Virus record (IMG/VR): IMGVR_UViG_3300009093_000034
Span: 241,834 to 305,833 of that record
DNA length: 64,000 bases
Strand: one strand, 5' to 3'
Shown here: positions 3,314 to 31,000 of the stretch, one piece after another
How positions within the stretch are numbered: the stretch's first letter is position 1
How the letters are laid out: each line of letters begins with the position of its first letter
Translations under genes and position numbers: made by a program
The notes under the pieces: generated by a model
The model's database searches: none
Seen by the model: the letters and a program-made list of their open reading frames with translations, nothing else
Told to the model about the DNA's origin: nothing

Positions 3314-4194
3314 TTGACTATGTGATGAAACAAAAACCCAAGGCCTTCATCTGCCAAGACTACATCGTTGTCGACATCTTTGACTTCGGTGCAAAGTTTC
3401 AGATCCCTTTCATTGCCGTTACAGACGGTTGTACAGGTGGCCAAAGGACAGAGACTGGAAGCCAGTTGCTCTGTCACATCTCAAGGATCGAAACCCTCAA
3501 GTATCTTGAGGAGTGGGACCTTGGACGTCCTGACACTGGTTTTGGTCGATCAGACCTTCTTGAGATCTTGAACAGGATTCAAAACAAGTTGACAGCGATC
3601 TCGACAGAGTTGAGCTTCAACTATGATCAGTTGCTTGCTACTCTTCAATTTCTGTTCATCATTGACAACCATGTCTATGGTATCAGGTCTGGGGACGGTG
3701 TGATGTTCACCTTCGATAAGAAGAAGATCATCAGAACCTCAGTGATCGAGTACACTCCTAACATGCCAAACTACTTGGCTTATAGAACCAACCCTGTTGC
3801 TTGGAGAGATCTTAGAACCACGGTTCATGGAGATCCTTACAGACCTTGTTTCAAAACCGTAACAACGTATGAGAGCACAGCTACCGAACCTACTACGACA
3901 GAAGACAGACAAGACTACTTTGAGATCACTTTCATTGATGAAGAGTTAAGCCCTGATTTAACCCATATCGGACTTGCTTCCGATGGCGTTGAGTCCTACA
4001 TGAACGAGAGTTCGAATCAAGGAATTCCTGTTTGGGGTTTGATCAAAGAACTCTCTGAGATCAAGAACCCTGAAGGAAACTTCTTGGTCCGAAGATTTCA
4101 GAAGATGGACAAGGGCTATCACTCAGCTGGCTTTGAGAACAAAGACGACGTAGCTATTGCCATGATCGATCTAGAAGCTTACAGAAGACTTTGA
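3310..4194 (+). CDS. PP2C-family protein phosphatase (YegK/PphC-like)
   Basis: Motifs CQDY, VTDGCTGG, SGDG, LASDG, DDVAIA; ATGA overlap at 3310. Confidence 0.8.
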   Translation: MIDYVMKQKPKAFICQDYIVVDIFDFGAKFQIPFIAVTDGCTGGQRTETGSQLLCHISRIETLKYLEEWDLGRPDTGFGRSDLLEILNRIQNKLTAISTELSFNYDQLLATLQFLFIIDNHVYGIRSGDGVMFTFDKKKIIRTSVIEYTPNMPNYLAYRTNPVAWRDLRTTVHGDPYRPCFKTVTTYESTATEPTTTEDRQDYFEITFIDEELSPDLTHIGLASDGVESYMNESSNQGIPVWGLIKELSEIKNPEGNFLVRRFQKMDKGYHSAGFENKDDVAIAMIDLEAYRRL

Positions 4195-4195
4195 C

Positions 4196-4480
4196 ATGGA
4201 ACAAACTTGCGATACTTGTTTCTTTTGTAGGGACATAATTGTAGGATCCAGTTGTTTTGGAAGATGGCCAGCTAGAGAGATCACAAGTTGTATTGTAGGT
4301 CGTGAAGGCGATCGTTTTCCAAAACCTGTTCCCGTTTCTAAATCAAACACTTGTCACAAGTGGGCTTCCAAGAACGAAAAATTCAAGATTCAAAAATTGC
4401 TAGATGGTAGAGGAATTTGGACACCAGCAGAAAAATGGGTCCCACCTTATAATCCAGAGAGGTCTAAGTACTATGACTAA
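4196..4480 (+). CDS. Small Cys-rich hypothetical protein
   Basis: CDTCFFC, C, C and CHKW; lies between phosphatase and kinase. Confidence 0.6.
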   Translation: MEQTCDTCFFCRDIIVGSSCFGRWPAREITSCIVGREGDRFPKPVPVSKSNTCHKWASKNEKFKIQKLLDGRGIWTPAEKWVPPYNPERSKYYD

Positions 4481-6155
4481 AACAGTTGTCTACCAAAACA
4501 AGAACATCGTTCTCTCTGATAGCAACTACCTCTCTGCAGGTGGAGAAGGAGAGATCTATCTCAAAGGTGGAGTGATCTTCAAGATCTACACCAAGCCTGT
4601 GAATCCTCAGCTTCTTGACAAGATCAAAGAACTCTCGGTTTTGGATCGGCCGAACATCATCAGGCCTCTAGAGTTAATCTTTGATCCAAACACAAATCAA
4701 CCTGTTGGTTACACCATGGCCTACGCAGATAACAGCGTTGGTCTTCCTCTTCTCTTCACCACTTCCTTCTTAGACCGGACCAACATCAGTCTTAAGTCAA
4801 TCCAAGAGTTGATCGAAGAGATGGCCAAGACCTTGGCCTTCATCCACTCGAAACAGGTCTTGGTGGTCGACCATAACGAGAACAACATTCTAGTCTCCAA
4901 GGGAAAGAAGTACACACAACCTTACTTCATCGATGTTGATAGTTGGCAGACTTCCAGGTTTCCTGCTACTGCCATCATGCCATCGATCAAGGACTTCAGA
5001 GCTTCAAAGTTTAGTGAGTTCACCGATTGGTACTCTCACGCCGTTCTCTCGTTTCAACTCTTGACAGGCATCCACCCTTACAAGGGAAAGCATGACGTCT
5101 TCAAGAACATTGAAGAACGAAGAAAGAACTTGGTCTCTGTGTTCCATAAGGATGTCCGTCTCCCAGCTTCGGTAAGAGACTTTGCCAACATCCCTCCTGC
5201 TTACCGATCATTGTATGAAGATATCTTCGACAAGGGTCTTGAGGTTCTTCCTCCAGCCATGGTCGCTACTCCTACTGTCAGAATCAAGAGAAAGTACTCG
5301 AACGTTCACTTCATCGTTGAGAAGATCCTTGAGACCAAGGAACCTATCGTCTACAGCGAGTGGATCAACGGGACTCTTGTGGCTGCCACAGAACATTACG
5401 TCTATGTTAACAAGGTTGAGTACAACAGACCTACACCTGATGCCAAGGTTTTCTTTGGAGACGAGGGAGGTCTTTACTTTGCCTTTATGGAAAATGGAGA
5501 CCTGACCATTCAGCCGGTGAAGAAAGGTGAAAATGTCAAGGACATCTATATCAAGCCTACGAAGCTCTTCACCATTGGTGGACGATTGTACGCTCTTGAT
5601 ATTGGACGGCTCTATGAGTTCTCTCTTCGTGAGAAGATGAATGTCTTAATCACTGTGATGTCTCCTATGATCAACACCTTGTCTACCAAGGTTTACGATC
5701 AAGTGGTTCACACAGAGATGTTCGGAGAGAAGTACTTCTACTGTTTGCCTGCAACCAAGACCTTCGTTCCTTTTCACGCTAAGGGTTTGAAAGAATACAA
5801 GATCTGGGATGCTCAAATGAGAGGAACAAGACTCCAGATCATCGCTACTACGAAGACTGGTGATCCTGTCATCATCACTTATCAGCTCAGCAAGACCTGG
5901 GACAAAGGGCTCTTGATGAACCAAGAGCCTCTCCCGGCTATTCGAGAGTTGAACTCGATCACCATTGCTAATGGGATGGTAGTTGATTACGATGCAGATG
6001 ACGATCAAGTGAAGATCACAAGTGCAGACCTTACTCAAGAGAAGATCATCAAAGATGCTGGTCTTCCTCAAGGTGCTCAATTGGTTTCTGGTTCGACAAG
6101 CGTATACTACCAAGTAGACAACGAGGTCAGAAAGATCTCGATGAAACAACCATGA
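4473..6155 (+). CDS. Ser/Thr protein kinase (YegI-like) with C-terminal beta-rich domain
   Basis: Gly loop SAGGEGEIY, FKIY, catalytic loop VDHNENNILV, IDVDSW in place of DFG, LLTGIHPY. Confidence 0.85.
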   Translation: MTKTVVYQNKNIVLSDSNYLSAGGEGEIYLKGGVIFKIYTKPVNPQLLDKIKELSVLDRPNIIRPLELIFDPNTNQPVGYTMAYADNSVGLPLLFTTSFLDRTNISLKSIQELIEEMAKTLAFIHSKQVLVVDHNENNILVSKGKKYTQPYFIDVDSWQTSRFPATAIMPSIKDFRASKFSEFTDWYSHAVLSFQLLTGIHPYKGKHDVFKNIEERRKNLVSVFHKDVRLPASVRDFANIPPAYRSLYEDIFDKGLEVLPPAMVATPTVRIKRKYSNVHFIVEKILETKEPIVYSEWINGTLVAATEHYVYVNKVEYNRPTPDAKVFFGDEGGLYFAFMENGDLTIQPVKKGENVKDIYIKPTKLFTIGGRLYALDIGRLYEFSLREKMNVLITVMSPMINTLSTKVYDQVVHTEMFGEKYFYCLPATKTFVPFHAKGLKEYKIWDAQMRGTRLQIIATTKTGDPVIITYQLSKTWDKGLLMNQEPLPAIRELNSITIANGMVVDYDADDDQVKITSADLTQEKIIKDAGLPQGAQLVSGSTSVYYQVDNEVRKISMKQP

Positions 6156-13672: not shown

Positions 13673-13878
13673 GTCCTGTTGAACTCTGCAAACACATGAT
13701 AGTTTACTCTGCTCTTTCCTCACCCAAAACTAAATCTATGTTTTGGCACGATGTTCGTAAGAACCTTCTTCTCTTCTTCTCTGAAGAGACCATAGTTGAA
13801 GCTGAAAAACAAATGGGAGTCTCAGATTACACCAAAGTCAACTTTCCCATGAGAATGGAATCATCGGAGACTACATGA
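13669..13878 (+). CDS. Small hypothetical protein
   Basis: ATGA overlaps. Confidence 0.55.
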   Translation: MSPVELCKHMIVYSALSSPKTKSMFWHDVRKNLLLFFSEETIVEAEKQMGVSDYTKVNFPMRMESSETT

Positions 13879-14708
13879 AGTTCTTTCTTTTCCTGTTCAT
13901 CACAACCTTTTCTTGGTCACAAGAGTTCGTGATCAAGAATGAGCCTCTTCCTGAGAACACGATCTATCTGACCTTCGACGATGGTCCAGGTCCGATGACT
14001 GAACATCTGGTCTCTATCTTAGAGTCTAGAGGAGTTCGAGCGACCTTCTTCATTAACTCCTACGACACCAAAGCAACCAAAGAGACGATCGCTACATCTA
14101 ACCGTCTTCTTCAGTACAAAGATCTTCTTCTTAAGGAGATCGCCGATGGAGACGTTCTAGGTAACCACACCTTCTCCCATAGAGACCTTGCGTGGTTAAG
14201 TCCTGAACAGATCAAGTGGCAACTTGAGAAGAACCAACAGAATCTCAACGAAGCTATCGGACCTTACACCTTCACCTTGATGAGACCTCCTTTTGGTTCT
14301 CCTTGGGAAGGTCTTGGAAAAGTGTACACTGAGGAACAAGTTCAAAAAGTTTCTCAGATATTGAAAGATGAGAAGTTGATCCCTATCAACTGGAACGTGG
14401 ATAGCTCAGACTCGTCTGACTGGGTGAAAGGAGAAGGAGCTAGAGCTTCAGACCCTAACACAGTGGATTTTGAGTACACCAGAGAATTTCTAAAGAAGTC
14501 CAAACGAGAGATCGAGAGACTTTGGCCTAAGATTCAGAACAAAGAAAGTTTGATCATCCTGTTTCATGATACTCATCCTACTTCGATTGATATCCTTCCC
14601 GGCTTCATCGACTACTGCTTGAGCCTTGGCTACAAGTTTGATACTCTAGACAACTACGTAAAGTGGAGAAACAACCATGAAGATAGCACTCTCACAGCTC
14701 AACGTTAA
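13875..14708 (+). CDS. Secreted polysaccharide/peptidoglycan deacetylase (NodB/CE4)
   Basis: Signal peptide; motifs LTFDDGP, NHTFSH, RPPFG, WNVDSSD, ILFHD. Confidence 0.9.
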   Translation: MKFFLFLFITTFSWSQEFVIKNEPLPENTIYLTFDDGPGPMTEHLVSILESRGVRATFFINSYDTKATKETIATSNRLLQYKDLLLKEIADGDVLGNHTFSHRDLAWLSPEQIKWQLEKNQQNLNEAIGPYTFTLMRPPFGSPWEGLGKVYTEEQVQKVSQILKDEKLIPINWNVDSSDSSDWVKGEGARASDPNTVDFEYTREFLKKSKREIERLWPKIQNKESLIILFHDTHPTSIDILPGFIDYCLSLGYKFDTLDNYVKWRNNHEDSTLTAQR

Positions 14709-16560
14709 AGCCGGTCAGGTTGCTACCAATCTGGCCCACATGAAAGCTCAGATCAAGAAGTATGATGAGAAGGATTACGACTTCATCGTCTTCCCTGAGC
14801 TCTGTGTTGGTGGCTACATGGTTGGAGACTTGTTCTTTGATCCTGATTTCATCAACATTCTTGAGGAAGCCAGCATCAATTTGATCACGTTCGTCTCGGA
14901 TCTTAGGATCAACGTGATCTTTGGAAACGTCTGTAGGACCGGTTATGGTCTTAGAGGTGAAAAGGACGAGAATGGAAAAGGTGCTCTTATGAACAGCGCT
15001 TTCATCATCTCGCCCTCGAACATCAAGGGAGACCCTGCTTTTGTCGGAATGCAGGGAAAACAACTTCTTCCTAACTATCGTGTCTTTGACGACAAAAGAT
15101 ACTTCACCTCGGATGACACATCGACTCCCTTCACCATCGAGACCAGACATGGAGACGCTGTTAAGATTGGTCTTGAGATCTGTGAAGATATGTGGGATGA
15201 CTCGTACAAGAAGAAACCCACCAAGAGTCTGATCGAACAGGGTGCTGAGTTGATCTTCAACATCAGCGCTTCGCCCTTCACCAAAGGAAAGAGTGGAGCT
15301 CGTGATGCTGTGATCATTGGCCATCTTCCTCTTAACTGGGACGGGTTTTTCTTCTACACAAATTGCACTGGTGCCCAGAACAACGGAAAGAACATCGTTA
15401 CCTTCGATGGTGACAGTGCTATCTTTAGCAAAGATGGTCGTCTGGACCGTGCTTATCAAGGTCAAGAAGTTCTTGAGTTTGATACTGAAAAGACTAACAA
15501 GTTCGCAGGTGTTCCTGATGGAATGTTGACTACTTCGAGCAAGTACTTCCATATCTTCCATGCTATCGTTCAAGGTATTCGTCACATGGATGACATCATG
15601 GGAAATAACAGGTTCCCATACATCGTCGGTGTGAGTGGAGGAATTGATAGTGCTGTAGTTCTTAGTCTTCTTGCTTTGGCTGTTGGCCCTGGAAGAATCC
15701 TGGCCTACAACCTCCCTACCAAGTACAACAGCAAACAGACCAAGGGCTTCGCTAAGTCTCTGTGCGATCATCTTGGCATCACTCTCAAAACTCTTCCTAT
15801 CGGAGCTCTTGCTGGAGAACAACTCAAGTTCTTCAAGAAACATAAGATCCATCCGAAGCCTCTCAACATTGAGAACATCCAGGCCAAGATCCGAGGGACC
15901 ACTGTCCTTTCGAACATCGCTGGCATCGAAGACGGTGTGATGACCAACAACGGAAACAAGGTCGAGATCGCTCTTGGTTACGCCACTCTTTACGGAGACG
16001 TTAATGGAAGTATCGCCCCTATCGGAGACTTGACTAAGGTCGAAGTTTGGGGATTAGCCAACTGGCTCAACGATTACTTCGAGAGCAACTGGGACGGAAA
16101 TAGACCGATCCCCAAAGAGTTGATCTGGAACCCGGCAGATCCTTTGGATACGGATGTCTTCTTGCCTTCGGCAGAACTCAAAGAGAATCAGAAGGATCCC
16201 ATGAAGTGGGGTTATCACGATGCCCTTCTCTCGTACGTGATGAAGTACAACAGAGGTTCGGTCAACGAACTGGCTGATTTGGTCATTTCGGGAAACTTCA
16301 TAGAATTTTACGGAAGACTATCGGCTGCTACCGAAGGAGATCTTACTCCTAAGCAGATCGAGATCACTGCTCCTAAGGGAATGCAGAACATCTTGAATGA
16401 TCTTCGTTGGTTCTTCAATCTTTTCTACAGAAGTACCTTCAAGAGGATCCAGTCGCCTCCGATCATCTTGATCAGCAGAACCTCGTTCGGCTTTGACTAC
16501 AGAGAATCTCAGTTGGGAAGACCTGACTACATTCTCCAAAGTGAAAAGTATCTCGGATAA
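14677..16560 (+). CDS. nadE: Glutamine-dependent NAD+ synthetase
   Basis: Nitrilase domain (FPELC, KQLLPNYRVFDDKRYF, EICEDMW) plus synthetase domain (GVSGGIDS, ENIQAKIRG, GNKVEIALGYATLYGD, PSAEL). Confidence 0.95.
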   Translation: MKIALSQLNVKAGQVATNLAHMKAQIKKYDEKDYDFIVFPELCVGGYMVGDLFFDPDFINILEEASINLITFVSDLRINVIFGNVCRTGYGLRGEKDENGKGALMNSAFIISPSNIKGDPAFVGMQGKQLLPNYRVFDDKRYFTSDDTSTPFTIETRHGDAVKIGLEICEDMWDDSYKKKPTKSLIEQGAELIFNISASPFTKGKSGARDAVIIGHLPLNWDGFFFYTNCTGAQNNGKNIVTFDGDSAIFSKDGRLDRAYQGQEVLEFDTEKTNKFAGVPDGMLTTSSKYFHIFHAIVQGIRHMDDIMGNNRFPYIVGVSGGIDSAVVLSLLALAVGPGRILAYNLPTKYNSKQTKGFAKSLCDHLGITLKTLPIGALAGEQLKFFKKHKIHPKPLNIENIQAKIRGTTVLSNIAGIEDGVMTNNGNKVEIALGYATLYGDVNGSIAPIGDLTKVEVWGLANWLNDYFESNWDGNRPIPKELIWNPADPLDTDVFLPSAELKENQKDPMKWGYHDALLSYVMKYNRGSVNELADLVISGNFIEFYGRLSAATEGDLTPKQIEITAPKGMQNILNDLRWFFNLFYRSTFKRIQSPPIILISRTSFGFDYRESQLGRPDYILQSEKYLG

Positions 16561-16583
16561 TTTCTAACTCTTTCCTAAGATCG

Positions 16584-16595
16584 TGAGATATTGTA
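16584..16595 (+). promoter_or_regulatory. Early-type promoter motif, copy 3
   Basis: TGAGATATTGTA; AAGGAG then ATG 16623. Confidence 0.75.
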
Positions 16596-16622
16596 GTAGT
16601 CTAAAACCAAGGAGTTTAAGAG

Positions 16623-16961
16623 ATGAATATCACCGATCTGGAAAAGAACGTTCTGGAAGCTGCTAAGGACCACTTCAACTACACGGTTGTGTATTTCAAG
16701 GGTGACAAGGCTGCTGCTGAAAACGCCAACATCCAAGACAATGCCGGCTGGTTTGGTGTTGAAAACGTCAAGGGTGATCCCAAGCAGATTCGTGGTGCTA
16801 TCGCTTCCCTCGTCAAGAAGGACCTGGTGATGGTTGACAGCCACACTGAAGGTCGCTGGGTCAGAAAGGGTCGCACGATGACCATGAAGCTCGTGGATGT
16901 TTGGGGAGATATCATCCCCACCGAAAAAGGCATTCGTTATATCTTCGCAGAGATGATGTAA
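16623..16961 (+). CDS. Hypothetical early protein (possible winged helix)
   Basis: QIRGAIASLVKKDLVMVD resembles a wHTH recognition helix and wing. Confidence 0.65.
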   Translation: MNITDLEKNVLEAAKDHFNYTVVYFKGDKAAAENANIQDNAGWFGVENVKGDPKQIRGAIASLVKKDLVMVDSHTEGRWVRKGRTMTMKLVDVWGDIIPTEKGIRYIFAEMM

Positions 16962-17263
16962 TGGCCAAGTTTGTCGGTATCAAGTGTGACGCCTGTTCTT
17001 GGAAGGACATGAGCGTCCCACGAGCTCAGTACCCTGAGTACTTGGACAGGTGTTGCCCTGAGTGTGGCTCGCCTCTATTGACTCTCGCTGACTGGAACCT
17101 TATCCTCCTGATGGAGGCTACTGACAAAAACCCTGGTCCTGTCTTGGATGCCAAGGCAGAAGACATCATCAACAAGAACCTCGAGATGAACGGATGTGGA
17201 CTGTGGGGTCTCAAGATCAATGGTCTTACTTTGGATGAAGCTCTTAAGGCGGTCGAAAAATGA
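16961..17263 (+). CDS. Zn-ribbon hypothetical protein
   Basis: TAATG overlap; CDAC...CPECG. Confidence 0.65.
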   Translation: MAKFVGIKCDACSWKDMSVPRAQYPEYLDRCCPECGSPLLTLADWNLILLMEATDKNPGPVLDAKAEDIINKNLEMNGCGLWGLKINGLTLDEALKAVEK

Positions 17264-17460
17264 ACGAACGTTTTGAGAAGATGATCCAGAAGTACATGAA
17301 AGCGTGGTGGGAACAGCACGCTGACTCTAGTCAGGAAGAAGCTGAAGAAGCCGAAGCTGACATGAGAGATCGTGAGCTCGAAAAGATCGAACGCGAAAGA
17401 CTCGAAAACGGATGGGGAGATGATCCCTGTCTTGACGATGTCATGGAGAGAGAAAGGTGA
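17260..17460 (+). CDS. Small acidic protein
   Basis: ATGA overlap. Confidence 0.55.
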   Translation: MNERFEKMIQKYMKAWWEQHADSSQEEAEEAEADMRDRELEKIERERLENGWGDDPCLDDVMERER

Positions 17461-17684
17461 GCATCGTCCGAGACAATATGTTATCTCGAAAAGGTTACTC
17501 AGGCTATTGCGGAGCAGACAAGTGCTCTCTGCATTGGCCTCGAACCTATTTTGATCCCAAGGTTCGACAGTTGAGATGCCCTTGTGGGTTTCAAACTGAC
17601 TTTGAACCTGAGTTCATCGACAAATACGTCGAGTTCCAGGGTGAAGATCTTCCTGTGAAATTCAAAGCTGTAGAGTGGTTGTAA
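17457..17684 (+). CDS. Small Cys-rich protein
   Basis: YCGADKC...RCPCG. Confidence 0.6.
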   Translation: MSIVRDNMLSRKGYSGYCGADKCSLHWPRTYFDPKVRQLRCPCGFQTDFEPEFIDKYVEFQGEDLPVKFKAVEWL

Positions 17685-17685
17685 C

Positions 17686-18204
17686 ATGACCGAAGCCTTA
17701 GCCAACAAAGTCTATGATGTTCTCGTCAATCTCGGTGGAGCTCAAGAAAGCAGCCGAGATAGTTTCGTTTTTGACCATACTACTGACAGAAACGTTACTG
17801 AATGGAGATTTCAGGGAAAGCTTGGCTTTGGTGGAAAGTTCAGATCCAGGCGTTTCACAGTAGATTGCTACCAAGAAGACGAAGCGACAGTTGAAAGGTT
17901 CTACGGAAAGAATCTCATTCCTGACATTAACGAAGAACTTCAAAAGCTTCGTTGGCAAACTCGTCAAGTTAAGTCCTTCTGGGCTCTTAAGAAAGCCTTT
18001 CGTTGGAATCGAAGCATCTTCAACTTCGGAAAGAAACACGACACCTCTCCTCAGTACGAGGTTCACTGGTTGAACAGAGCCAGTGAGATCATCAAGACCG
18101 ATGTCTGTACAAACCCCGATCTTCCTTACGTGGATCTTGACAAAGAAGATCCTAAGGAACGTTACTTCGGGGTCTTGAAGTTCATCTTGGAGGATGAAGA
18201 ATGA
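17686..18204 (+). CDS. Hypothetical protein
   Basis: ORF track; WRFQGKLGFGGKF. Confidence 0.7.
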   Translation: MTEALANKVYDVLVNLGGAQESSRDSFVFDHTTDRNVTEWRFQGKLGFGGKFRSRRFTVDCYQEDEATVERFYGKNLIPDINEELQKLRWQTRQVKSFWALKKAFRWNRSIFNFGKKHDTSPQYEVHWLNRASEIIKTDVCTNPDLPYVDLDKEDPKERYFGVLKFILEDEE

Positions 18205-18422
18205 AAACTTTTCTCGTCCTTCTAATCAATCTAGGCATAGTGGCTGTGTCTGTAGCCATACTTAGATTTCTCGTATTCCCAGCTATCGTTACCCAAGAAC
18301 TCATTGTTTCTATACACGGTAACAACGGTGTTTTCATCGTAGTGGGAATCTGTTTAGTGTGGTCAGTGATCACCACAGCTGTCATTTACTTTGTAACTAA
18401 ACGTCTCGTCGGAAGATCTTGA
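18201..18422 (+). CDS. Two-TM membrane protein
   Basis: Two hydrophobic helices; SD GGAGG. Confidence 0.6.
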   Translation: MKTFLVLLINLGIVAVSVAILRFLVFPAIVTQELIVSIHGNNGVFIVVGICLVWSVITTAVIYFVTKRLVGRS

Positions 18423-18423
18423 C

Positions 18424-18747
18424 GTGAGCTACGACAGAATCTTGATGGCGTTTCCAGTAACTCGTTACGCTGTCTTCTCTGCTAAGACAGAGTCTGATCG
18501 TCCTGAGAGTGTTTCTCACGAGATCCCAATTCCTGGAGAAGCAAGGTTCGCCTATGAAGGTGAACAAGTGGTCATGACAGACGCAACCTGGGAAGACATC
18601 CTTTTGTTCTTCGATAAAGTGATCGCTAAGAAGGTCGTTGAGTACAACCTTACAGAATGGCATCGAGTATACTTAGAAGGCATTGAGTTAGACCTTCCAG
18701 GTGGAGCTGATGACATTCCAACTTATAACATAGAAGCAGGCAGTTAA
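18424..18747 (+). CDS. Hypothetical protein
   Basis: ORF track. Confidence 0.6.
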   Translation: MSYDRILMAFPVTRYAVFSAKTESDRPESVSHEIPIPGEARFAYEGEQVVMTDATWEDILLFFDKVIAKKVVEYNLTEWHRVYLEGIELDLPGGADDIPTYNIEAGS

Positions 18748-19113
18748 ATGAACAATACTTTCAAGATCATCGCTAGAACTCTTTTGTGGATCTTTGGCTT
18801 TGTGGTATCCTACGTTTATGGAGGATGGATAGTTTCGTGTGTTCTACACACTGGATTCATCCAAAATGCCATCTCCGACAATGTTATTATTGGAATAGGA
18901 CTACTTCTCTTTGGATCTGCTTTTGGGATAGTAATATCTCTCGTAGCAGGAATAGTCGTTTGGTTAGTAGTATCATTCATCGTATGGTGTCTTACTTCAT
19001 TGGTCGGTGCAATCGTTCATCATATATTAACCGGAACGTTTCGTATTAACAAAGCAGATTTCGATGCTATCTTTGAGTGGCCGGAAACTGTATACAACAG
19101 GTGGATCAAGTAA
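18748..19113 (+). CDS. Membrane protein
   Basis: Long hydrophobic stretches. Confidence 0.6.
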   Translation: MNNTFKIIARTLLWIFGFVVSYVYGGWIVSCVLHTGFIQNAISDNVIIGIGLLLFGSAFGIVISLVAGIVVWLVVSFIVWCLTSLVGAIVHHILTGTFRINKADFDAIFEWPETVYNRWIK

Positions 19114-19725
19114 ATGAACATTCTCAAAAGATTTCTATCAGTAATTGCTACTCTTGCAGTTGCTGTATCTTTCATCTGGTGGTGGGACGGTATCATCTGT
19201 TCTTCTCTTATGAAGAAAGATATTCCATGGTTTCTCATCGTTCCAGCTCACATCTTTTTGGATGCGATCATGTTTATCTTAAGTTGTGTGATGATCGCCC
19301 TTTGTTGGGTTGCAACAAGCGCCATTGTATGGGTTGTGATCTACGGACCCTACACCTGTTACAAGTACATCAAAACAGGTGATTTCGACAATGACCCTGA
19401 GTATGCATTTGAGAAGATTCTCAAGTGGCCTAAGTTTCTTGTAGAAGACCTTGAAAAATGGCACGAGGACAAGTGGGACAAGATTTGGAAAGACAAGAAA
19501 GATGGTATCGAATCTAAGATCAAGCAATTTCTTATAGCTTACTCTGGGGTTCGACGAGTCAAGTACACCTTCAAAAAGGAAGGTGTTGATCTTCTTGCTG
19601 CTTATCAAGATAGAGCCGTTGAAGATTCCAGATTCTTGATGCCTTTCAGCTACTTCTCTAAGGAAGAAAAGAAAGCATTGAAAAAGTTCTGTGGTTTTCA
19701 CTCTTACGAGTTCATTCACTACTAA
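19114..19725 (+). CDS. Membrane protein with soluble C-terminus
   Basis: N-terminal TM helices; abuts the previous stop. Confidence 0.6.
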   Translation: MNILKRFLSVIATLAVAVSFIWWWDGIICSSLMKKDIPWFLIVPAHIFLDAIMFILSCVMIALCWVATSAIVWVVIYGPYTCYKYIKTGDFDNDPEYAFEKILKWPKFLVEDLEKWHEDKWDKIWKDKKDGIESKIKQFLIAYSGVRRVKYTFKKEGVDLLAAYQDRAVEDSRFLMPFSYFSKEEKKALKKFCGFHSYEFIHY

Positions 19726-19735
19726 GGAGAAAGTC

Positions 19736-19936
19736 ATGGTTGCTATTATTTGTTATGGTCTTATTTCCTCTCTTTGTGAGGTCTCTGCTACCATGATGAT
19801 CTGTATGTTCGGTCTTCACATGGACGCTGGACGTTCATTCATTACAGGAATCTCGATAACTCTTCCTATCCAAATGTTTTCAGCAATTCTGTTTGATTAT
19901 CTTCACCGTATCCAGAAGTTACTAGAGAAGGACTAA
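19736..19936 (+). CDS. Small membrane protein
   Basis: SD TAAGGAG, ATG 19736. Confidence 0.55.
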   Translation: MVAIICYGLISSLCEVSATMMICMFGLHMDAGRSFITGISITLPIQMFSAILFDYLHRIQKLLEKD

Positions 19937-19939
19937 CAA

Positions 19940-21136
19940 ATGAAACTTAACCCTATCGTAGAACATTTCGGAGACAGTCAGGACTGGTACAAGTACACCA
20001 TGGGAAACGCGATCCTTCGCAAGTTCCCTGACGTTTGGGTCAAGTGGAAGTTCAAGTGCCGGAACCCTGGAATCATCTGGACCAAAGAGATGGTTCAAGA
20101 GATCAACGAACAGCTTGACCATCTCTGTACTCTGTCTCCTGATGAACAGGAAGTTGCCTTCGTACGAGGTATCAAGTACATCTCAAAGGGCTACGCTGAC
20201 TTCTTGATGATGCTGCGCTTACCTCGTCACCTCATCCGAGTTCGTCTTGATGGAACTGATCTCGAGATCAGTTGTGAAGGACCTTGGTTCATCACCACCT
20301 ACTTTGAGATTCCCACTTTGGCGATTGTCAATGAGGTGTATTTCCAGTTCACCGTTCCTGAAGAGAAGAAGGCTGAGATCCTCAAGGGAGCTGATGAGCG
20401 TCTGACTGAGAAGATCGAGCAGGCCAAGTTCCATCCAGGTTTCACCTTTACTGACTTCGGTACACGCCGAAGGTTCAGCAAGGCTTGGCAGGAACACGTC
20501 ATCCAGCGTCTGAAGGCTGAGCTTCCTGGAACCTTCAATGGAACCTCGAACCCTTACTTCGCTATGAAGTACGACCTCACTCCTATCGGAACCGTGGCCC
20601 ACGAGTGGTACATGGTTGGTCAGGGCATTGAAGGTGTTACATTGGCCAACAGCCAGAAGTACATGCTTCAGGCGTGGTCGGATGTTTACCGAGGAGACTT
20701 GGGAACAGCTCTGACTGACACCTTGGGGAACGATAAGTTCATCGAGGATTTTGACAAGTACTTCGCCCTTCTCTACAGTGGACTTCGCCACGACTCGGGA
20801 GACCCCTATGATTGGGGTGAACTTATGATCGACCATTACCTCGATCTGGGCATTGATCCCAAGACCAAGACCTTGGTCTTTTCGGATGGTCTCACGATCC
20901 TCAAGGCCATTGATCTTTGGAAGCACTTCAAAGATCGTGTTAGGGTCTCGACCTCGGGCATTGGTACTAGCTTGACCAACGATATTCCTGAATGTGTTCC
21001 CTTGAACATCGTCATGAAGATCATCATGGTCAATGGAAACCCCGTAGCCAAGGTCAGCAACAACCCAAGCAAAGGAATGTGCGAGGACCCTGAGTTCGAA
21101 GCCTACCTTAAGAAAGTCATCAAGCTGAAGGTCTAA
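19940..21136 (+). CDS. pncB: Nicotinate phosphoribosyltransferase
   Basis: DWYKYTM, TDFGTRRR, GTVAHEW (phospho-His), ALTDT, LRHDSGDP, VFSDGL, GIGTSLTND, IVMK, AKVSNNPSK. Confidence 0.93.
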   Translation: MKLNPIVEHFGDSQDWYKYTMGNAILRKFPDVWVKWKFKCRNPGIIWTKEMVQEINEQLDHLCTLSPDEQEVAFVRGIKYISKGYADFLMMLRLPRHLIRVRLDGTDLEISCEGPWFITTYFEIPTLAIVNEVYFQFTVPEEKKAEILKGADERLTEKIEQAKFHPGFTFTDFGTRRRFSKAWQEHVIQRLKAELPGTFNGTSNPYFAMKYDLTPIGTVAHEWYMVGQGIEGVTLANSQKYMLQAWSDVYRGDLGTALTDTLGNDKFIEDFDKYFALLYSGLRHDSGDPYDWGELMIDHYLDLGIDPKTKTLVFSDGLTILKAIDLWKHFKDRVRVSTSGIGTSLTNDIPECVPLNIVMKIIMVNGNPVAKVSNNPSKGMCEDPEFEAYLKKVIKLKV

Positions 21137-23100: not shown

Positions 23101-23471
23101 AACTAGCTGTCGTAGGATCTCGTGACTTCTCAGCTTATGGCCTCCTCAGAGACGAACTTAACAAGATCGAAGAGATCACTGAGATCGTCTCTGGGGGTGC
23201 TAGAGGTGCAGACTCTCTAGCTGAATTTTATGCTAAGAAACATGGAATCAAACCAGTGGTTTTTGAAGCTAATTGGATTGCTTTTGGAAAACCAGCTGGA
23301 AATATCAGAAACACAAGCATCGTGAATTACTGTGATCAACTCATAGCCTTTTGGGACGGTCACTCAAGTGGTACGAAAGACTCGATCAACAAAGCAAAGG
23401 CACAAGGAAAACTTCTCAAGATAGTCTACTACGTAGAGATTGCTCAAACAAACCTCTATCCTGAGACATAG
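23097..23471 (+). CDS. SLOG-superfamily protein (YspA/DUF2493-like)
   Basis: LAVVGSRDF, IVSGGARGAD, AGNIRN, IAFWDGHSSGT. Confidence 0.85.
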   Translation: MKLAVVGSRDFSAYGLLRDELNKIEEITEIVSGGARGADSLAEFYAKKHGIKPVVFEANWIAFGKPAGNIRNTSIVNYCDQLIAFWDGHSSGTKDSINKAKAQGKLLKIVYYVEIAQTNLYPET

Positions 23472-23478
23472 AACAAAA

Positions 23479-23943
23479 ATGGACAACAACGAACCAATCT
23501 TATTTTGGAAAACACACGAAGATGGGAGACCTTTACCGTACGGAGGATTTTCCAATTTCTCTCGTCATCCTTTTACGGTGGACGGCATAAAGTATAGAAC
23601 AAGCGAACATTATTTTCAAGCTATGAAGTTCCCTGTTGGAGAACATAGAGATGCTGTCATTAATGCTGAAAAGCCAAATGATGCAGCTCTCATAGGTAGA
23701 GATCGTTCTCGTCCGTTACGATCTGATTGGGAAACTGTCAAACTTGATGTGATGCGTAAGGCTCTTCGTTATAAGTTTGATGCTTACCCTGATCTACAAA
23801 GACTTCTTCTTTCTACAGACAAACGAGAACTTGTTGAAGCTTCTCCTATGGATGATTTTTGGGGAATTAAGTCGTTGACTCTTCCAGGAAACGGCAAGAA
23901 TTGGTTAGGAAAACTTCTTATGGAGCTTAGAGATGAGTTGTAA
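23479..23943 (+). CDS. NADAR family protein (YbiA / T4 gp30.3-like)
   Basis: FSNF, SEHYFQAMKF, DWETVKLDVM, LVEASPMDDFWG, GKNWLGKLLMELR. Confidence 0.9.
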   Translation: MDNNEPILFWKTHEDGRPLPYGGFSNFSRHPFTVDGIKYRTSEHYFQAMKFPVGEHRDAVINAEKPNDAALIGRDRSRPLRSDWETVKLDVMRKALRYKFDAYPDLQRLLLSTDKRELVEASPMDDFWGIKSLTLPGNGKNWLGKLLMELRDEL

Positions 23944-27694: not shown

Positions 27695-28007
27695 ATTCTG
27701 ATGCAAGTAAGTTTAACTCCCGATCATATTGATCGGCTTCTAACCTAAGGGCCTTCGAGACAGTTCTCAAGAAGGTCTTTTTTGTTTCCACAGCTTTTAT
27801 CTCGTAGAACTCATCAAGTTTTGCTTCTGCCACTCTCACAGCAGAAGAGAGTGCAAACTCTTTTTGAGCATCCAAACAGAGACACTTGAAAGTAAACTCA
27901 TTCGTTGTTTCATCAACTTCTGGAACAAGTCTATCTGCGCAATAAGCGCAGTACTGACCTTGTTCAGGACCTGATTCAACGATAAAGTACTTCGTTCCTA
28001 TCTTCAC
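27693..28007 (-). CDS. Small Cys-containing protein downstream of the tail fibre
   Basis: CAYC...CLC; GTGA overlap. Confidence 0.6.
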   Translation of the reverse strand: MKIGTKYFIVESGPEQGQYCAYCADRLVPEVDETTNEFTFKCLCLDAQKEFALSSAVRVAEAKLDEFYEIKAVETKKTFLRTVSKALRLEADQYDRELNLLASE

Positions 28008-31000
28008 TTGAGTTTCCTAGTTCTCTTGATTCCAAGTTCCAAGTCTGAGATCCTTTCATCAAGTTCTTGAACTGCTAGGAGCAGAGTTCCTAACACGTTG
28101 CTCATGTCCATAGAGTTCTTCTTTGGAGTGGAGAGTAAGGAGTTGGTGTCTTCAGCGATGAAACCGATCTTTGGAGTCTCAAGATCATTTTTGTAAGTAT
28201 AAGAGACAACCTTGATCGTGTTGATCAATTCGGTTGCATTGATTTTAGCCTTCTCAATGTTGGTCTTGAACTCTCTACTAGATATGGTGTTGAAGTTATC
28301 TGCTGTGAAGATATGAGCTAGAACACTTCCATCAGCTGCTCCAGCAGTAGCTCCGATCTTCAAGTTTCCAGAACCGTTGGAAGTAAGACTGATCTTGCTT
28401 CCTAAAGTTAGGGAAACGTCATCTGCGTCAGCAGCTCCGAGAATAATGAGTTCGTCAGTTCCACCGAAAGAAATTCTGACCTTTCTATCTCCTGCTAAAT
28501 TATTCAACTCAACAGTTCCACCTACTCTCATCAAACCATCTGTGATGGAAGAACCATCAACGTATGGGATGTACATCAATGTAGGATCTAGAGTGGTACT
28601 AGGAACAGTTCCTCCCATGATCGTGTTGATACCTACGTGAAGGTTGTCTACACGGTCAACGTTGAAGGTGTCAGTAGGAGAGATGGTGTTGTGAGCTCCG
28701 ACCTTAAAACCATGAAGAGCTACAGAGGTACTGAAGTTTTGGTTGATGTGGACGTCAGCATAAGCCTTAGGGATCAAGGAATTAGCTACAGCTCCAGAAG
28801 GCAAGGTGTTAGCAAAGGCTCCTGAACCGTCTGTAAGATTAGCGATCCTGATGTCTCCAGTATCACCAGTCCAAGTAGCTTGAACGGAACTATCAGAGAA
28901 CTTTACGGCTTTGAAAAGACCGACGAATGAACTGATTCTAGAATCAGAGTCTCCTAGAAGTGTGTTTCCATCTACTTGAAGAGCATCAGTTGTGACACTC
29001 GTCGTGATGTAGTTAACAACAGCTGTTGAGTTAACAGGGTTTGGACTTCCGGTATCAAGAACACTCAAGGTGATGGAACCAATGTCAACATCGAACTCTG
29101 AGTACTTAGCGAACAAAGCGGTCTTGTAGATGATGACCTTGTATCGTTGTCCAGAAGCTACAGCAGTAAGAGCGGACCCGTTCCAGTAGGTGATCGTAGA
29201 AGTTGGAGTCAAGTGAAGAAGCCAAGTTGAGCCTGTGTTAGACACGGACCAAGCATAGGTTCCTGGTGTCGCTTCTGCCCAGTTCTCGGATAGAGCTGTG
29301 ACTTCAAAGAAGAGCTTGACTAGAATGTTATCGATGTTTGGAAGCTCGATCACTCCTTGAGGACCTGAGATCATCAAGTTAGAAACGTCAATGTTAGCGT
29401 AAGGAAGAGTTCCTACAACTCTTTGGACATCTGTAGAGTGAAGAGCAGATTGGTTACCGTAAGGTTGAGCTTTGATCTCATAGTGGTTTCCGAAAACCGG
29501 GTGAGTCAAGAGTGGGACGATGAAGTTTGAAGCATTACCCGGATCTACAATCTCAGGAGATCCGTACCTCGCAACAAGGTCCTCGAATAGTTGAGGATAA
29601 GAAGTTTGAGGGTAAGACGTAGTACCGTCCATCAACAACCAACTGTACTCTGCGACGTCTACTCCGACAGGGAGAGTCTTCATGGCTCCGATTGGGTAGT
29701 CACCTTGTCTTTGATAGCTTCTGATACCGTTGATGTCAACCAACAATTGGTTAGGAGCCATTGCTGTTCCGATGAAGATCAAAGGCTCATTAGGGGGAAT
29801 GCTAGCAGGTCTTGGTGTGAGGTTTCCTTGGTGTTCGAGATAGTACTCAACTCCTGGAGTGAACCAGTTGTCAAGGAAGGTCATCAAACCCTTACGGAGG
29901 AAGATTCCTGTGGTTCCAGGGTTGATTGGTGTAGGAGAACCTTGACCAAGGTAAAAACCAAGAAGGTTTGTTCTGTCAGGAACTGATCTATCACCAAGGA
30001 TAGCAGAACCTAGTGGAGAAGTAGCGTAAGCTCCTTGCTCAATCATGTGAGAACCATTTTCAAACAAGAAGTCAAGAGCAGAGTCCCAAGCTACGTAGAT
30101 TGGACCAAAGGCTTGAGTAGCTTCAAGAAGGATGTCTACAGAGGTCTGAACTCCAATCGAGGTGTTCGTGATCTGAGAGATGACGTTGACTTGAGCTCCT
30201 GTGTAGCCAGAAACTGTGCTCAAGTTGGTGAAGGCATGAACTATTGCAGTTGCCACGTCTCCAGAGAAAGGGGTAAGTGGGTCAACTGAGTTGGACCAAG
30301 GAGAACCCCAAGCTGGAGGTGGAGTTGATCCAGTGTAAAGACTTGAGTAAGTAACGTTTCCACCAGGAACAGAATTGATGATCGCGTTTAGTTCAGCGAT
30401 GTCTGTTGCTGATGGAGTTGGACCTGGACCCATGATAGTGATGTGAACAGCGTTTTGAGTCCAAATAGCGATCCACTTGTTGTAACCAGGGTCTGATCCT
30501 TGAGGCCATTCAACGTTAGGTCTGTTGGCTCTGAAGTTGTACTGGAAAGTCGATCCTGCGTAGTTATCTTGGATAGCGAAAACCTTAGGATAAGTTCCTC
30601 CCATAGGAGAAACAGGGAAACTGACTTGCTCGCCAAAGATCGTCTCGTACTGAGTCTGGTCGATAGGACCACGACCGTCACCTTCAGGTTGAATCTCAAT
30701 CACTACGGTTCCATCAACAGGAGTACTGGAGATGAAACCAACTTGGATGATCTCAGATCCGTTTAGAGAAGCAGCAACGATGTCTGTGGTAAAGCCACCT
30801 GGAACGTTAGAGACGTAGACTAGTTTTCCTCTGTCTCCATTGACGAAACCAGGAGTGTACTCAGAAGAGGTTCCTGTGGCAACCCAAACAAATTGTCCGA
30901 AAGGTTGAACGTGAAACTTTGCACCAGCGGCAGCTGGTTCTAGAGCGATTCCGAGAGTCTTTAGGTGTCGAGCAGTTCTGGTAAGAACTGCTACTCCGTC

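What the first reader, a model, noticed from the sequence alone, without database searches (positions are those of the whole stretch)
14677..21136. Phage pncB + Gln-dependent nadE: candidate deamidated (Preiss-Handler) NAD+ rebuilding pathway
Seen: two intact, motif-complete enzymes, NadE and His-autophosphorylating PncB, in the early region. Known: many defences (Thoeris/SIR2, TIR-CBASS, DSR) destroy NAD+. The described phage rescue routes are NARP1 (Adps+Namat, from ADP-ribose) and NARP2 (NamPT+NMNAT); both are amidated and use neither PncB nor NadE. Inference: this phage could rebuild NAD+ via nicotinate -> NaMN -> NaAD -> NAD+, using host or out-of-window PncA and NadD, which would be a third counter-defence route. 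PncA and NadD were not seen in this window.
Basis: partly seen in the sequence, partly recalled or inferred. Interest (0 to 1): 0.78.

Follow-up and report, generated by a model that had tools for sequence, protein, structure and literature searches.

The report
Jumbo phage four-enzyme NAD salvage pathway
This 306-kb phage carries intact genes for all four enzymes needed to turn nicotinamide back into NAD+ through nicotinic acid, a gene set already noted by sequence analysis in other giant phages but never tested as a way to beat NAD-destroying bacterial defences.

Summary
Window 14677-16560 encodes an intact glutamine-dependent NAD synthetase (NadE). Window 19940-21136 encodes an intact nicotinate phosphoribosyltransferase (PncB).

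The two "missing" steps are phage-encoded, 2.8-5.0 kb upstream of the window start. They are a NadM-Nudix bifunctional adenylyltransferase/ADP-ribose pyrophosphatase and a 267-aa "long" nicotinamidase. The nicotinamidase has every catalytic and metal-binding residue and a confidently modelled nicotinamidase fold.

The complete genome (305,833 bp, terminal repeats) has no NamPT/NadV, NadD, NadR, PnuC or PRPP synthetase. It therefore carries none of NARP1, NARP2 or NARP3.

All four proteins are 46-49% identical to a contiguous nadM-pncA-nadE-pncB operon in a Treponemataceae MAG. The same four genes cluster in several bacteria and in other jumbo viral records.

Among 60 IMG/VR PncB loci with at least 5 kb on both flanks, 48 have NadE within 10 kb.

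The pathway inference is therefore strengthened, but the novelty claim is not. Preiss-Handler clusters in jumbo phages were published in 2024, and "NARP3" is already PnuC+NadR (2026). A counter-defence role is still untested for any such phage.

Verdict: a new member of a known kind, of moderate interest.

The parts
14677..16560 (+). nadE: two-domain, glutamine-dependent NAD(+) synthetase, 627 aa (genome 256510-258393)
   Evidence: Pfam CN_hydrolase + NAD_synthase and the TIGR00552 domain are above cut-off. Best solved relative is B. thailandensis Gln-NadE 4f4h, E = 1e-47. E41/K128/C169 and SGGIDS 320-325 are present. Nearest relatives are only 48% identical.
19940..21136 (+). pncB: nicotinate phosphoribosyltransferase, 398 aa (genome 261773-262969)
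   Evidence: NF003704 scores 471 bits and TIGR01514 408 bits, both above cut-off. PDB 1yir E = 4e-96. H221 is invariant. It is the only NAPRTase-family gene in the genome. It is sister to a 70%-identical gene on a phage-like contig.
23440..23943 (+). NADAR-domain protein, 167 aa, 2.3 kb downstream of pncB. It is a possible ADP-ribose-processing neighbour and not a pathway enzyme.
   Evidence: PF08719 scores 130 bits against a cut-off of 35. A NADAR gene also lies about 7 kb downstream of pncB in viral locus L010. Iyer et al. note NADAR next to phage NAD salvage genes.
16575..19936 (+). Spacer between nadE and pncB: about ten small same-strand ORFs (66-203 aa) of unknown function.
   Evidence: The ORFs tested gave no Pfam or PHROG match. 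The region has no Rfam family.

Best explanation
The phage encodes a complete deamidating (Preiss-Handler-type) NAD+ salvage pathway of four enzymes, in two gene pairs about 17 kb apart.

The four genes:
- NadM-Nudix (357 aa): genome 236832-237905 = L007:11832-12905, which is 3.9-5.0 kb before the window.
- A 'long' nicotinamidase (267 aa): genome 238211-239014 = L007:13211-14014.
- NadE: window 14677-16560.
- PncB: window 19940-21136.

Proposed chemistry:
1. The nicotinamidase deamidates nicotinamide to nicotinate. Nicotinamide is the base released when NAD+ is cleaved.
2. PncB joins nicotinate to PRPP, with ATP, to give NaMN.
3. NadM adenylates NaMN to NaAD.
4. NadE amidates NaAD to NAD+, using glutamine and ATP.
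5. The Nudix half of NadM splits ADP-ribose, the other cleavage product, into AMP and ribose-5-phosphate. The host's PRPP synthetase can return that to PRPP; the phage has no PRPP synthetase of its own.

The net effect is that the infected cell keeps or regains NAD+ whatever removes it, including NADase defence effectors.

Shown here: the identity, intactness and active-site conservation of the four enzymes; their co-inheritance as a module; and the absence of the other known routes.

Inferred: the substrates, the order of the last two steps, expression during infection, and any benefit against defence.
For: Enzyme identities:
- NadE and PncB.
- NadM-Nudix: Pfam CTP_transf_like + NUDIX above cut-off. 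It aligns at full length to Synechocystis NadM 2qjo (E = 2e-63) and Francisella NadM 2qjt (E = 4e-54). The Nudix box is at 249-268.
- Nicotinamidase: the nine best PDB sequence matches are nicotinamidase entries. D10, D56, H58, H125, K159 and C211 are invariant in 43 family members; four of them (D10, D56, H58, C211) lie in motifs that HMMER aligns with the corresponding motifs of yeast Pnc1, and which residues of Pnc1 form the triad and the metal site is recalled from the literature, not tested here. The AlphaFold model has pLDDT 97.5, and its top 23 Foldseek PDB matches are all nicotinamidases, with target-normalised TM-scores 0.75-0.82 for 22 of them and 0.51 for the longer Drosophila enzyme.

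Module evidence:
- All four proteins are 46-49% identical to the adjacent nadM-pncA-nadE-pncB genes of a Treponemataceae MAG.
- The same four genes lie together in Andreprevotia, Chitinimonas and Sulfuricella, with an NrtR-like gene on the opposite strand upstream; the NrtR identity was scanned only in Andreprevotia.
- The same four genes cluster in viral records of 198-329 kb. One of these is a complete record with terminal repeats. Each has PncB as its only NAPRTase-family gene.

Survey: 48 of 60 IMG/VR PncB loci with at least 5 kb on both flanks have NadE within 10 kb, and 39 have a PncA-type gene.

Alternatives absent from the complete genome: a second NAPRTase-family gene (NamPT/Namat), a second CTP-transferase-like gene (NadD/NadR), PnuC, and the PRPS N-terminal domain (Prs/Adps).

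Phylogeny: PncB is sister to a viral-contig gene (support 100) inside an 11-member all-viral group.
Against: - There is no experimental or expression evidence of any kind.
- The four genes are not one operon in this phage, and no promoter signal stands out.
- NadM-Nudix enzymes characterised so far favour NMN, so step 3 as written may be slow or the order may differ (PMC3376133).
- NadM, NadE and the nicotinamidase all score below the NCBIfam equivalog cut-offs.
- NadE sits on a long branch in a clade that mixes cellular and viral members.
- pncB and the nicotinamidase gene have GC3 about 2 SD above the genome mean, so they may be later arrivals.
- PRPP supply depends on the host.
Confidence: 0.65

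Rival explanations
1. The genes are a general auxiliary metabolic module. They raise or maintain the NAD(H) pool for the phage's own heavy nucleotide and redox metabolism and for ADP-ribose-related enzymes. They were not selected against NADase defences, and any counter-defence effect is incidental.
For: The same four-gene unit is an ordinary salvage operon in bacteria, next to an NrtR-like regulator gene in Andreprevotia. The genome region holds nucleotide-metabolism genes: a thymidylate-synthase/dUTPase fusion, a kinase and ribonucleotide reductase. NARP2 is described as overproducing NAD+ constitutively. Published accounts of NAD-jumbo phages stress metabolic redirection.
Against: The phage has no NAD-dependent DNA ligase; its ligase is ATP-dependent. 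A route that begins with nicotinamide and includes an ADP-ribose pyrophosphatase fits recycling of the NADase products. NADAR and Macro genes point to ADP-ribose conflict. The two readings are not mutually exclusive.
Confidence: 0.3
2. The last two steps run in the Francisella order: NadE amidates NaMN to NMN (acting as an NMN synthetase), and NadM then adenylates NMN to NAD+. NaAD is not an intermediate.
For: Bacterial NadM enzymes use NMN efficiently. In Francisella, replacement of NadD by NadM goes with a NadE turned NMN synthetase (PMC3376133). NadM-Nudix and this NadE subfamily are adjacent in cellular genomes. The phage has no NadD.
Against: The Francisella enzyme is a single-domain ammonia-dependent NadE, whereas this one is the two-domain glutamine form. 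In Acinetobacter a bifunctional NadM works with a conventional NAD synthetase, and archaeal NadM takes both NaMN and NMN. No specificity determinant could be tested here.
Confidence: 0.3
3. The 267-aa isochorismatase-fold protein is some other cysteine amidohydrolase, not a nicotinamidase. The phage route would then start from nicotinate only.
For: Pfam and NCBIfam scores are weak: PF00857 36 bits, and PRK11609 30 bits against a cut-off of 174. Compared with the classical enzymes it aligns to, it carries roughly 50-60 extra residues, within about 63-119.
Against: The residues assigned above to the catalytic triad and the metal site are all invariant. The top 23 fold matches are all nicotinamidases. 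The gene sits next to pncB, nadM, nadE or an NrtR-like/Nudix gene in 41 of the 80 cellular loci examined.
Confidence: 0.1
4. The genes are recently captured host genes carried as passengers, with no role in infection.
For: pncB and the nicotinamidase gene have raised GC3 (0.63 against a genome mean of 0.46, sd 0.08). The closest NadE, NadM and nicotinamidase relatives among the loci collected here are cellular.
Against: No relative found is more than 70% identical, and no relative shown to be cellular is more than about 50% identical. All active sites are intact. The four-gene set recurs in other large viral records. PncB groups with viral sequences.
Confidence: 0.05

Closest known systems
Preiss-Handler gene sets of 'NAD-jumbo phages' (Li et al., Microbiome 2024, PMC11662467) and Xanthomonas phage X1 (PMC13384950)
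   Same: These are phage-encoded pncB and nadE plus an adenylyltransferase, clustered in genomes over 200 kb. They were proposed, by sequence analysis only, to make NAD+ and possibly to counter NAD+ depletion.
   Different: The published cluster is pncB-nadD-nadE, and the short-NadE viral loci surveyed here carry a single-domain NadE. This phage uses NadM fused to a Nudix ADP-ribose pyrophosphatase, a two-domain glutamine-dependent NadE and a long nicotinamidase variant. Its genes are split into two pairs, and it has no NamPT.
NARP2 / Vibrio phage KVP40 NadV + NatV (NamPT + NMNAT-Nudix)
   Same: Both start from nicotinamide and PRPP and end with a NadM-Nudix-type adenylyltransferase. Both are independent of the exact form of the ADP-ribose product.
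   Different: NARP2 is amidated and has two steps. This phage has no NamPT. It goes through nicotinate and NaMN and needs an amidation step, so it costs more ATP plus glutamine.
NARP1 (Adps + Namat)
   Same: The proposed purpose is the same: rebuilding NAD+ from the NADase products.
   Different: NARP1 pyrophosphorylates ADP-ribose and joins it to nicotinamide directly. This genome has no PRPS-like gene and no second NAPRTase-family gene.
NARP3 (PnuC-like transporter + NadR-like enzyme; Sci Adv 2026, PMC13464706)
   Same: It is a phage-encoded route to NAD+ with a HIGH-motif adenylyltransferase.
   Different: NARP3 imports nicotinamide riboside. This genome has no PnuC and no second CTP-transferase-like gene.
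Bacterial nadM-pncA-nadE-pncB salvage operons (Treponemataceae MAG, Andreprevotia, Chitinimonas, Sulfuricella)
   Same: They hold the same four protein families, including the long nicotinamidase and the two-domain NadE. All four proteins of the Treponemataceae operon are 46-49% identical to the phage's, and its gene order matches that of viral locus L027.
   Different: The bacterial versions are cellular and contiguous, and in Andreprevotia a scanned NrtR-like repressor gene lies next to the cluster. The phage copies are dispersed and no NrtR was seen.
Francisella tularensis route (NadE as NMN synthetase + NadM)
   Same: NadM replaces NadD and works together with a NadE homologue.
   Different: The Francisella NadE is single-domain and ammonia-dependent. 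Which order the phage enzymes use is unknown.

Membership tests
PncB (nicotinate phosphoribosyltransferase, TIGR01514 / NF003704) | Full-length match above the curated cut-off | tested here: met
   NF003704 scores 471 bits (cut-off 379) and TIGR01514 408 bits (cut-off 269.55). PDB 1yir E = 4e-96 over residues 7-395.
PncB (nicotinate phosphoribosyltransferase, TIGR01514 / NF003704) | Autophosphorylated histidine in the T-x-A-H-E motif, and the PRPP-binding motifs | tested here: met
   H221 in TVAHEW is invariant in 41 relatives. GTRRR 174-178, RHDSGD 283-288 and GIGT 340-343 are present. The function of each motif is taken from established knowledge of the family.
Glutamine-dependent NAD synthetase (two-domain NadE) | N-terminal nitrilase-type glutaminase domain with a Glu-Lys-Cys triad, fused to a PP-loop synthetase domain | tested here: met
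   Pfam CN_hydrolase (2-256) and NAD_synthase (315-524) are above cut-off. E41, K128, C169 and SGGIDS 320-325 are present.
Glutamine-dependent NAD synthetase (two-domain NadE) | Score above the NCBIfam equivalog cut-off | tested here: not met
   NF010588 scores 306.8 bits against a cut-off of 479. Only the TIGR00552 domain model passes, at 100 bits against 63.65. This is a divergent member on a long branch.
Glutamine-dependent NAD synthetase (two-domain NadE) | Substrate is NaAD rather than NaMN | not testable with these tools
   This needs enzyme kinetics.
[quoted passage not shown] | N-terminal HIGH-type nucleotidyltransferase plus C-terminal Nudix domain in one chain | tested here: met
   PF01467 (13-74) and PF00293 (225-352) are above cut-off. 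It aligns at full length to 2qjo and 2qjt. The motif reads H18-K-A-H21; the third position also varies (G/A/S/I) in eight relatives. The Nudix box is at 249-268.
[quoted passage not shown] | Score above the NCBIfam equivalog cut-off | tested here: not met
   The best model, NF003786, scores 288.9 bits against a cut-off of 397.
Nicotinamidase (PncA/Pnc1) | Asp-Lys-Cys catalytic triad and Asp-His-His metal site on an isochorismatase fold | tested here: met
   D10/K159/C211 and D56/H58/H125 are invariant in 43 sequences. The motifs holding D10, D56, H58 and C211, and the WP-x-HC motif, are aligned by HMMER to the matching motifs of yeast Pnc1; the roles of the Pnc1 residues are from the literature. 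The model has pLDDT 97.5, and the top 23 PDB fold matches are nicotinamidases.
Nicotinamidase (PncA/Pnc1) | Score above the NCBIfam PRK11609 equivalog cut-off | tested here: not met
   It scores 29.9 bits against a cut-off of 174. It belongs to a separate long subfamily, with 534 50%-identity clusters at E < 1e-30.
NARP1 | Adps (PRPS-like) and Namat (NamPT-like) genes | tested here: not met
   The genome has no Pribosyltran_N match. PncB is its only NAPRTase-family gene.
NARP2 | NamPT together with an NMN adenylyltransferase | tested here: not met
   The NMNAT (NadM) is present but NamPT is absent.
NARP3 | PnuC-like transporter and NadR-like kinase/adenylyltransferase | tested here: not met
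   There is no NMN_transporter match. NadM is the only CTP_transf_like gene.
Canonical Preiss-Handler pathway (PncB, NadD, NadE) | NadD-type NaMN adenylyltransferase | tested here: not met
   The only adenylyltransferase is NadM-type. The route is the same in logic, but this step is filled by a non-orthologous enzyme.
Phage counter-defence against NADase effectors | Restores NAD+ and plating in cells with Thoeris, DSR or SIR2-HerA | not testable with these tools
   This needs experiments.

The most novel reading that the evidence does not exclude
The nadM(Nudix)-pncA-nadE-pncB cassette is a genuine fourth phage NAD+ reconstitution pathway. It recycles both NADase products: nicotinamide through nicotinate and NaMN, and ADP-ribose through ribose-5-phosphate to PRPP. 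It should therefore be indifferent to defences that alter the ADP-ribose product, such as aRES, which makes ADPR-1P. It moves as a unit between bacteria and jumbo phages. The cassette also defines a large, unnamed 'long nicotinamidase' family that often sits next to NrtR-like genes.
Probability: 0.35. Interest if true: 0.7.

Novelty: new member of a known kind. Interest (0 to 1): 0.45.

Why it matters
NAD+ depletion is a common end-point of bacterial anti-phage systems. The phage answers tested so far (NARP1, NARP2, NARP3) all stay on the amidated side of NAD metabolism. A deamidating route has only been predicted.

This genome gives a clean, complete test case:
- It is a complete genome with terminal repeats.
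- All four enzymes are present with intact active sites.
- None of the other known routes is present to confound the result.

The four genes could be expressed directly in laboratory strains carrying NADase defences.

The genome is also an exception to the published generalisation that every NadM-carrying phage also carries NadV. In addition, it points to a widespread long nicotinamidase subfamily that current family models barely recognise.

Tried and rejected
- Megablast of the region against 50,697 GenBank phage records found no match.
- Single-sequence scans of IMG/VR with PncB and NadE found no relative. An alignment-based scan was needed.
The representative library was used instead.
- The 43-sequence alignment was too diverse for the genome-contig scan. 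A 10-sequence alignment worked.
- Fusion proteins containing the long nicotinamidase domain were checked for a Rosetta-stone link to NadM. Their extra parts have no Pfam match, so they are uninformative.
- PHROG and Pfam scans of the small ORFs between and around nadE and pncB gave nothing.
- Promoter and terminator scans were at chance level, and there were no Rfam matches.
- A Terminase_6N search to confirm the viral nature of comparison records found nothing even in the window's own genome, so it is uninformative.
- Phage taxonomy and host could not be set. Nine of the ten largest proteins tested have no match to a structural or packaging PHROG; seven have none at all. The rIIA N-terminus is 42% identical to PA5oct-like Pseudomonas jumbo phages.
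- The idea that the H-x-G-H to H-K-A-H change disables NadM was rejected, because that position varies among relatives.

Full report
**1. What is at the coordinates**

The window is the last 64 kb (genome 241834-305833) of a 305,833-bp virus record with direct terminal repeats, rated complete.

ORF 14677-16560 (+) encodes a 627-aa protein.
- It has an N-terminal nitrilase-type glutaminase domain and a C-terminal PP-loop NAD synthetase domain.
- Its best solved relative is the glutamine-dependent NadE of Burkholderia thailandensis (4f4h, E = 1e-47).
- The triad motifs (E41, K128, C169) and SGGIDS 320-325 are present.

ORF 19940-21136 (+) encodes a 398-aa PncB.
- It scores above both curated NCBIfam cut-offs.
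- It aligns end to end with P. aeruginosa PncB (1yir, E = 4e-96).
- The phospho-histidine H221 is invariant in 41 relatives.

**2. The rest of the pathway is phage-encoded, just outside the window**

Family searches of the whole genome gave one CTP-transferase-like match and one isochorismatase match. Both lie a few kb before the window start.

The first is a 357-aa NadM-Nudix protein (genome 236832-237905 = L007:11832-12905).
- Both Pfam domains are above cut-off.
- It aligns at full length to Synechocystis NadM 2qjo (E = 2e-63) and Francisella NadM 2qjt.
- Its HIGH motif reads H-K-A-H. The third position varies (G/A/S/I) among eight relatives, so this is not a defect.
- The Nudix box is intact.

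An 81-aa ORF follows it. Then comes a 267-aa isochorismatase-fold protein (genome 238211-239014 = L007:13211-14014).
- It scores weakly on the family models: PF00857 36 bits, and PRK11609 30 bits against a cut-off of 174.
- The nine best PDB sequence matches are nicotinamidase entries.
- D10/K159/C211 and D56/H58/H125 are invariant across 43 family members. I read these as the nicotinamidase catalytic triad and metal ligands; the HMMER alignment to yeast Pnc1 pairs the motifs holding most of them, and the Pnc1 residue roles come from the literature.
- An AlphaFold model (pLDDT 97.5, pTM 0.93) has nicotinamidases as its 23 best PDB fold matches: yeast Pnc1, A. baumannii, Leishmania, Drosophila, P. 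horikoshii, M. tuberculosis, streptococci and B. subtilis.
- It belongs to a large 'long' subfamily, with 534 50%-identity clusters at E < 1e-30.

**3. What the genome lacks**

- PncB is the only NAPRTase-family gene, so there is no NamPT/NadV and no Namat.
- NadM is the only CTP-transferase-like gene, so there is no NadD and no NadR.
- There is no PnuC and no PRPS N-terminal domain, so no Prs or Adps.
- There is no NAD-dependent ligase. The phage ligase is ATP-dependent.

NARP1, NARP2 and NARP3 are therefore all absent. ADP-ribose-related genes are present: NADAR 2.3 kb after pncB, a Macro domain and two further Nudix genes elsewhere.

**4. The four genes are one evolutionary module**

The top NadE relative with a long contig lies in a Treponemataceae MAG, in an ordinary cellular neighbourhood. 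There the genes nadM-Nudix, a 272-aa gene, nadE and pncB are contiguous. The phage proteins are 46%, 48%, 48% and 49% identical to these four.

- In the 80 best loci, 17 have pncB nearby and 30 have a gene that hits the NadM profile, most of them about 230-aa Nudix-type genes. Three of these were scanned and all three best match the ADPR-responsive repressor NrtR.
- Four loci have all four genes: the Treponemataceae MAG, Chitinimonas, Andreprevotia and Sulfuricella.

This gene context independently ties the long nicotinamidase to NAD salvage.

**5. Distribution in viruses**

In GenBank phages, PncB occurs in only 13 records and NadE in 16. Both occur in Agrobacterium phage Atu_ph07, a 595-kb megaphage and a few gut contigs.

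In IMG/VR, 310 contigs encode PncB relatives.
- Among the best 80, 62 have NadE within 10 kb and 48 have a PncA-type gene.
- Among the 60 with at least 5 kb on both flanks, the numbers are 48 and 39, and 13 have all four genes with a NadM-type enzyme.
- Most use a single-domain NadE. The two-domain form is rarer (L012, L025, L077, and a split form in L010/L014).
- L027 has nadM-pncA-nadE-pncB contiguous. L036 (300 kb, 98% complete) and L057 (329 kb, terminal repeats, complete) have the same set within 6 kb.
- Each of these records has PncB as its only NAPRTase-family gene.

The published statement that every NadM-bearing phage also has NadV therefore has exceptions.

Caveat: IMG/VR records can include host flanks, and L027 is labelled a provirus. 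I did not verify that each contig is viral.

**6. Phylogeny and composition**

In a 74-sequence tree, the window's PncB is sister (support 100) to a 70%-identical gene on two 15-19 kb contigs with phage-like content: ribonucleotide reductase with an intein, GIY-YIG genes and a 5'-3' exonuclease. Both lie in an 11-member all-viral group (support 82). Cellular sampling in that tree is limited. In the 5.8-billion-protein search, however, the first relative carrying an organism name is only 48% identical.

NadE sits on a long branch. It is sister (support 100) to a clade that mixes cellular members (the Treponemataceae MAG and another cellular contig) with a phage contig carrying tail-tube genes.

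No gene has a near-identical host copy, so recent capture is unlikely. However, pncB and the nicotinamidase gene have GC3 of 0.63 against a genome mean of 0.46 (sd 0.08). They may be younger residents than nadM and nadE.

**7. Mechanism**

Shown:
- four intact enzymes of defined families
- active-site residues conserved
- a co-inherited module
- no alternative route in the genome

Inferred from established knowledge of these families:
1. nicotinamide -> nicotinate (nicotinamidase)
2. nicotinate + PRPP (+ATP) -> NaMN (PncB)
3. NaMN + ATP -> NaAD (NadM)
4. NaAD + glutamine + ATP -> NAD+ (NadE)
5. ADP-ribose -> AMP + ribose-5-phosphate (the Nudix domain), which feeds host PRPP synthesis

The order of steps 3 and 4 could be reversed, as in Francisella. 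There NadM replaces NadD and NadE acts as an NMN synthetase. In Acinetobacter and archaea, by contrast, NadM works with a conventional NAD synthetase (PMC3376133). The route costs more ATP than NARP1 or NARP2.

**8. Comparison with the literature**

- NARP1 and NARP2: Osterman et al.. Their preprint does not mention PncB or NadE.
- NARP3 is PnuC+NadR (Sci Adv 2026).
- Li et al. 2024 described 174 'NAD-jumbo phages'. These include pncB-nadD-nadE clusters called a complete Preiss-Handler pathway. They mention phage pncA and suggest a possible counter-defence role.
- Xanthomonas phage X1 carries pncB, nadM, nadD, nadE and NAMPT, with the same speculation.
- I found no paper that tests a deamidating route experimentally.

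**9. Verdict**

The idea is already in print as a prediction, and 'third route' is taken. This is a new member of a known kind.

What is specific here:
- NadM-Nudix takes the place of NadD.
- The nicotinamidase is the long variant.
- NadE is the two-domain, glutamine-dependent form.
- NamPT is absent.
- There is a clear link to a bacterial four-gene operon.

The counter-defence function is plausible but unproven.

Noticed in passing
window 23440-23943 (+): A NADAR-domain protein (130 bits) lies 2.3 kb downstream of pncB. A NADAR gene also lies downstream of pncB in viral locus L010. It may reverse ADP-ribosylation or process ADP-ribose derivatives.
   Followed up: partly
window 13875-14708 (+): A polysaccharide deacetylase (NodB-type, 277 aa) ends 32 nt inside the nadE start. 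It is an odd neighbour for a NAD gene, and its substrate is unknown.
   Followed up: no
window 3208-4194 (+) and 4404-6155 (+): A PP2C-type protein phosphatase and a 583-aa protein with a Ser/Thr protein kinase domain sit side by side. They could be a phage-encoded kinase/phosphatase pair.
   Followed up: no
window 58062-59441 (+): The phage has an ATP-dependent DNA ligase and no NAD-dependent ligase anywhere in the genome. Ligation therefore does not explain the NAD genes.
   Followed up: partly
window 33183-41027 (-) and 28004-31207 (-): A 2614-aa ORF has no Pfam match. Nearby is a 1067-aa protein ending in an endosialidase-chaperone (Peptidase_S74) domain, which is probably a tail fibre. 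Most of the large proteins of this phage that were scanned have no PHROG or Pfam match.
   Followed up: no
L007:4415-5713 (genome 229415-230713), with neighbours L007:3432-4418 and L007:7738-8625: A thymidylate-synthase-like domain is fused to a dUTPase. Next to it are a nucleotide-kinase-like gene and a weak PLP-enzyme match. This may be a module for an unusual DNA base.
   Followed up: no
L007:14029-14775 (genome 239029-239775): A VWA-like protein (248 aa) is encoded directly after the nicotinamidase gene. Its relation to the NAD genes is unknown.
   Followed up: no
L010:4423-7326 and L014:2993-5875: In two viral contigs the two-domain nadE is split into two ORFs, right after the position of the catalytic Cys (query residues about 173-177). 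In L010 a 324-aa ORF lies in between. This looks like a mobile insertion, but there is no Rfam intron match.
   Followed up: partly
L025:13038-13916 and L025:17809-18684: One viral contig carries two copies of the long nicotinamidase, next to pncB, a two-domain nadE and a gene that hits the NadM profile.
   Followed up: no
genome 238211-239014 and window 19940-21136: The nicotinamidase and pncB genes have GC3 of 0.63 against a genome mean of 0.46 (sd 0.08). nadM and nadE are typical.
   Followed up: partly
L184 (genome 17247-19466): The rIIA homologue's N-terminal half is 42% identical to that of PA5oct-like Pseudomonas jumbo phages (about 287 kb). This is the only hint of kinship found, and the host remains unknown.
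   Followed up: partly
L198:6809-9878: In a cellular contig, a NadM-Nudix gene sits directly upstream of a two-domain nadE from the same subfamily as the phage's. The NadM+NadE pairing is therefore not limited to the four-gene operon.
   Followed up: no
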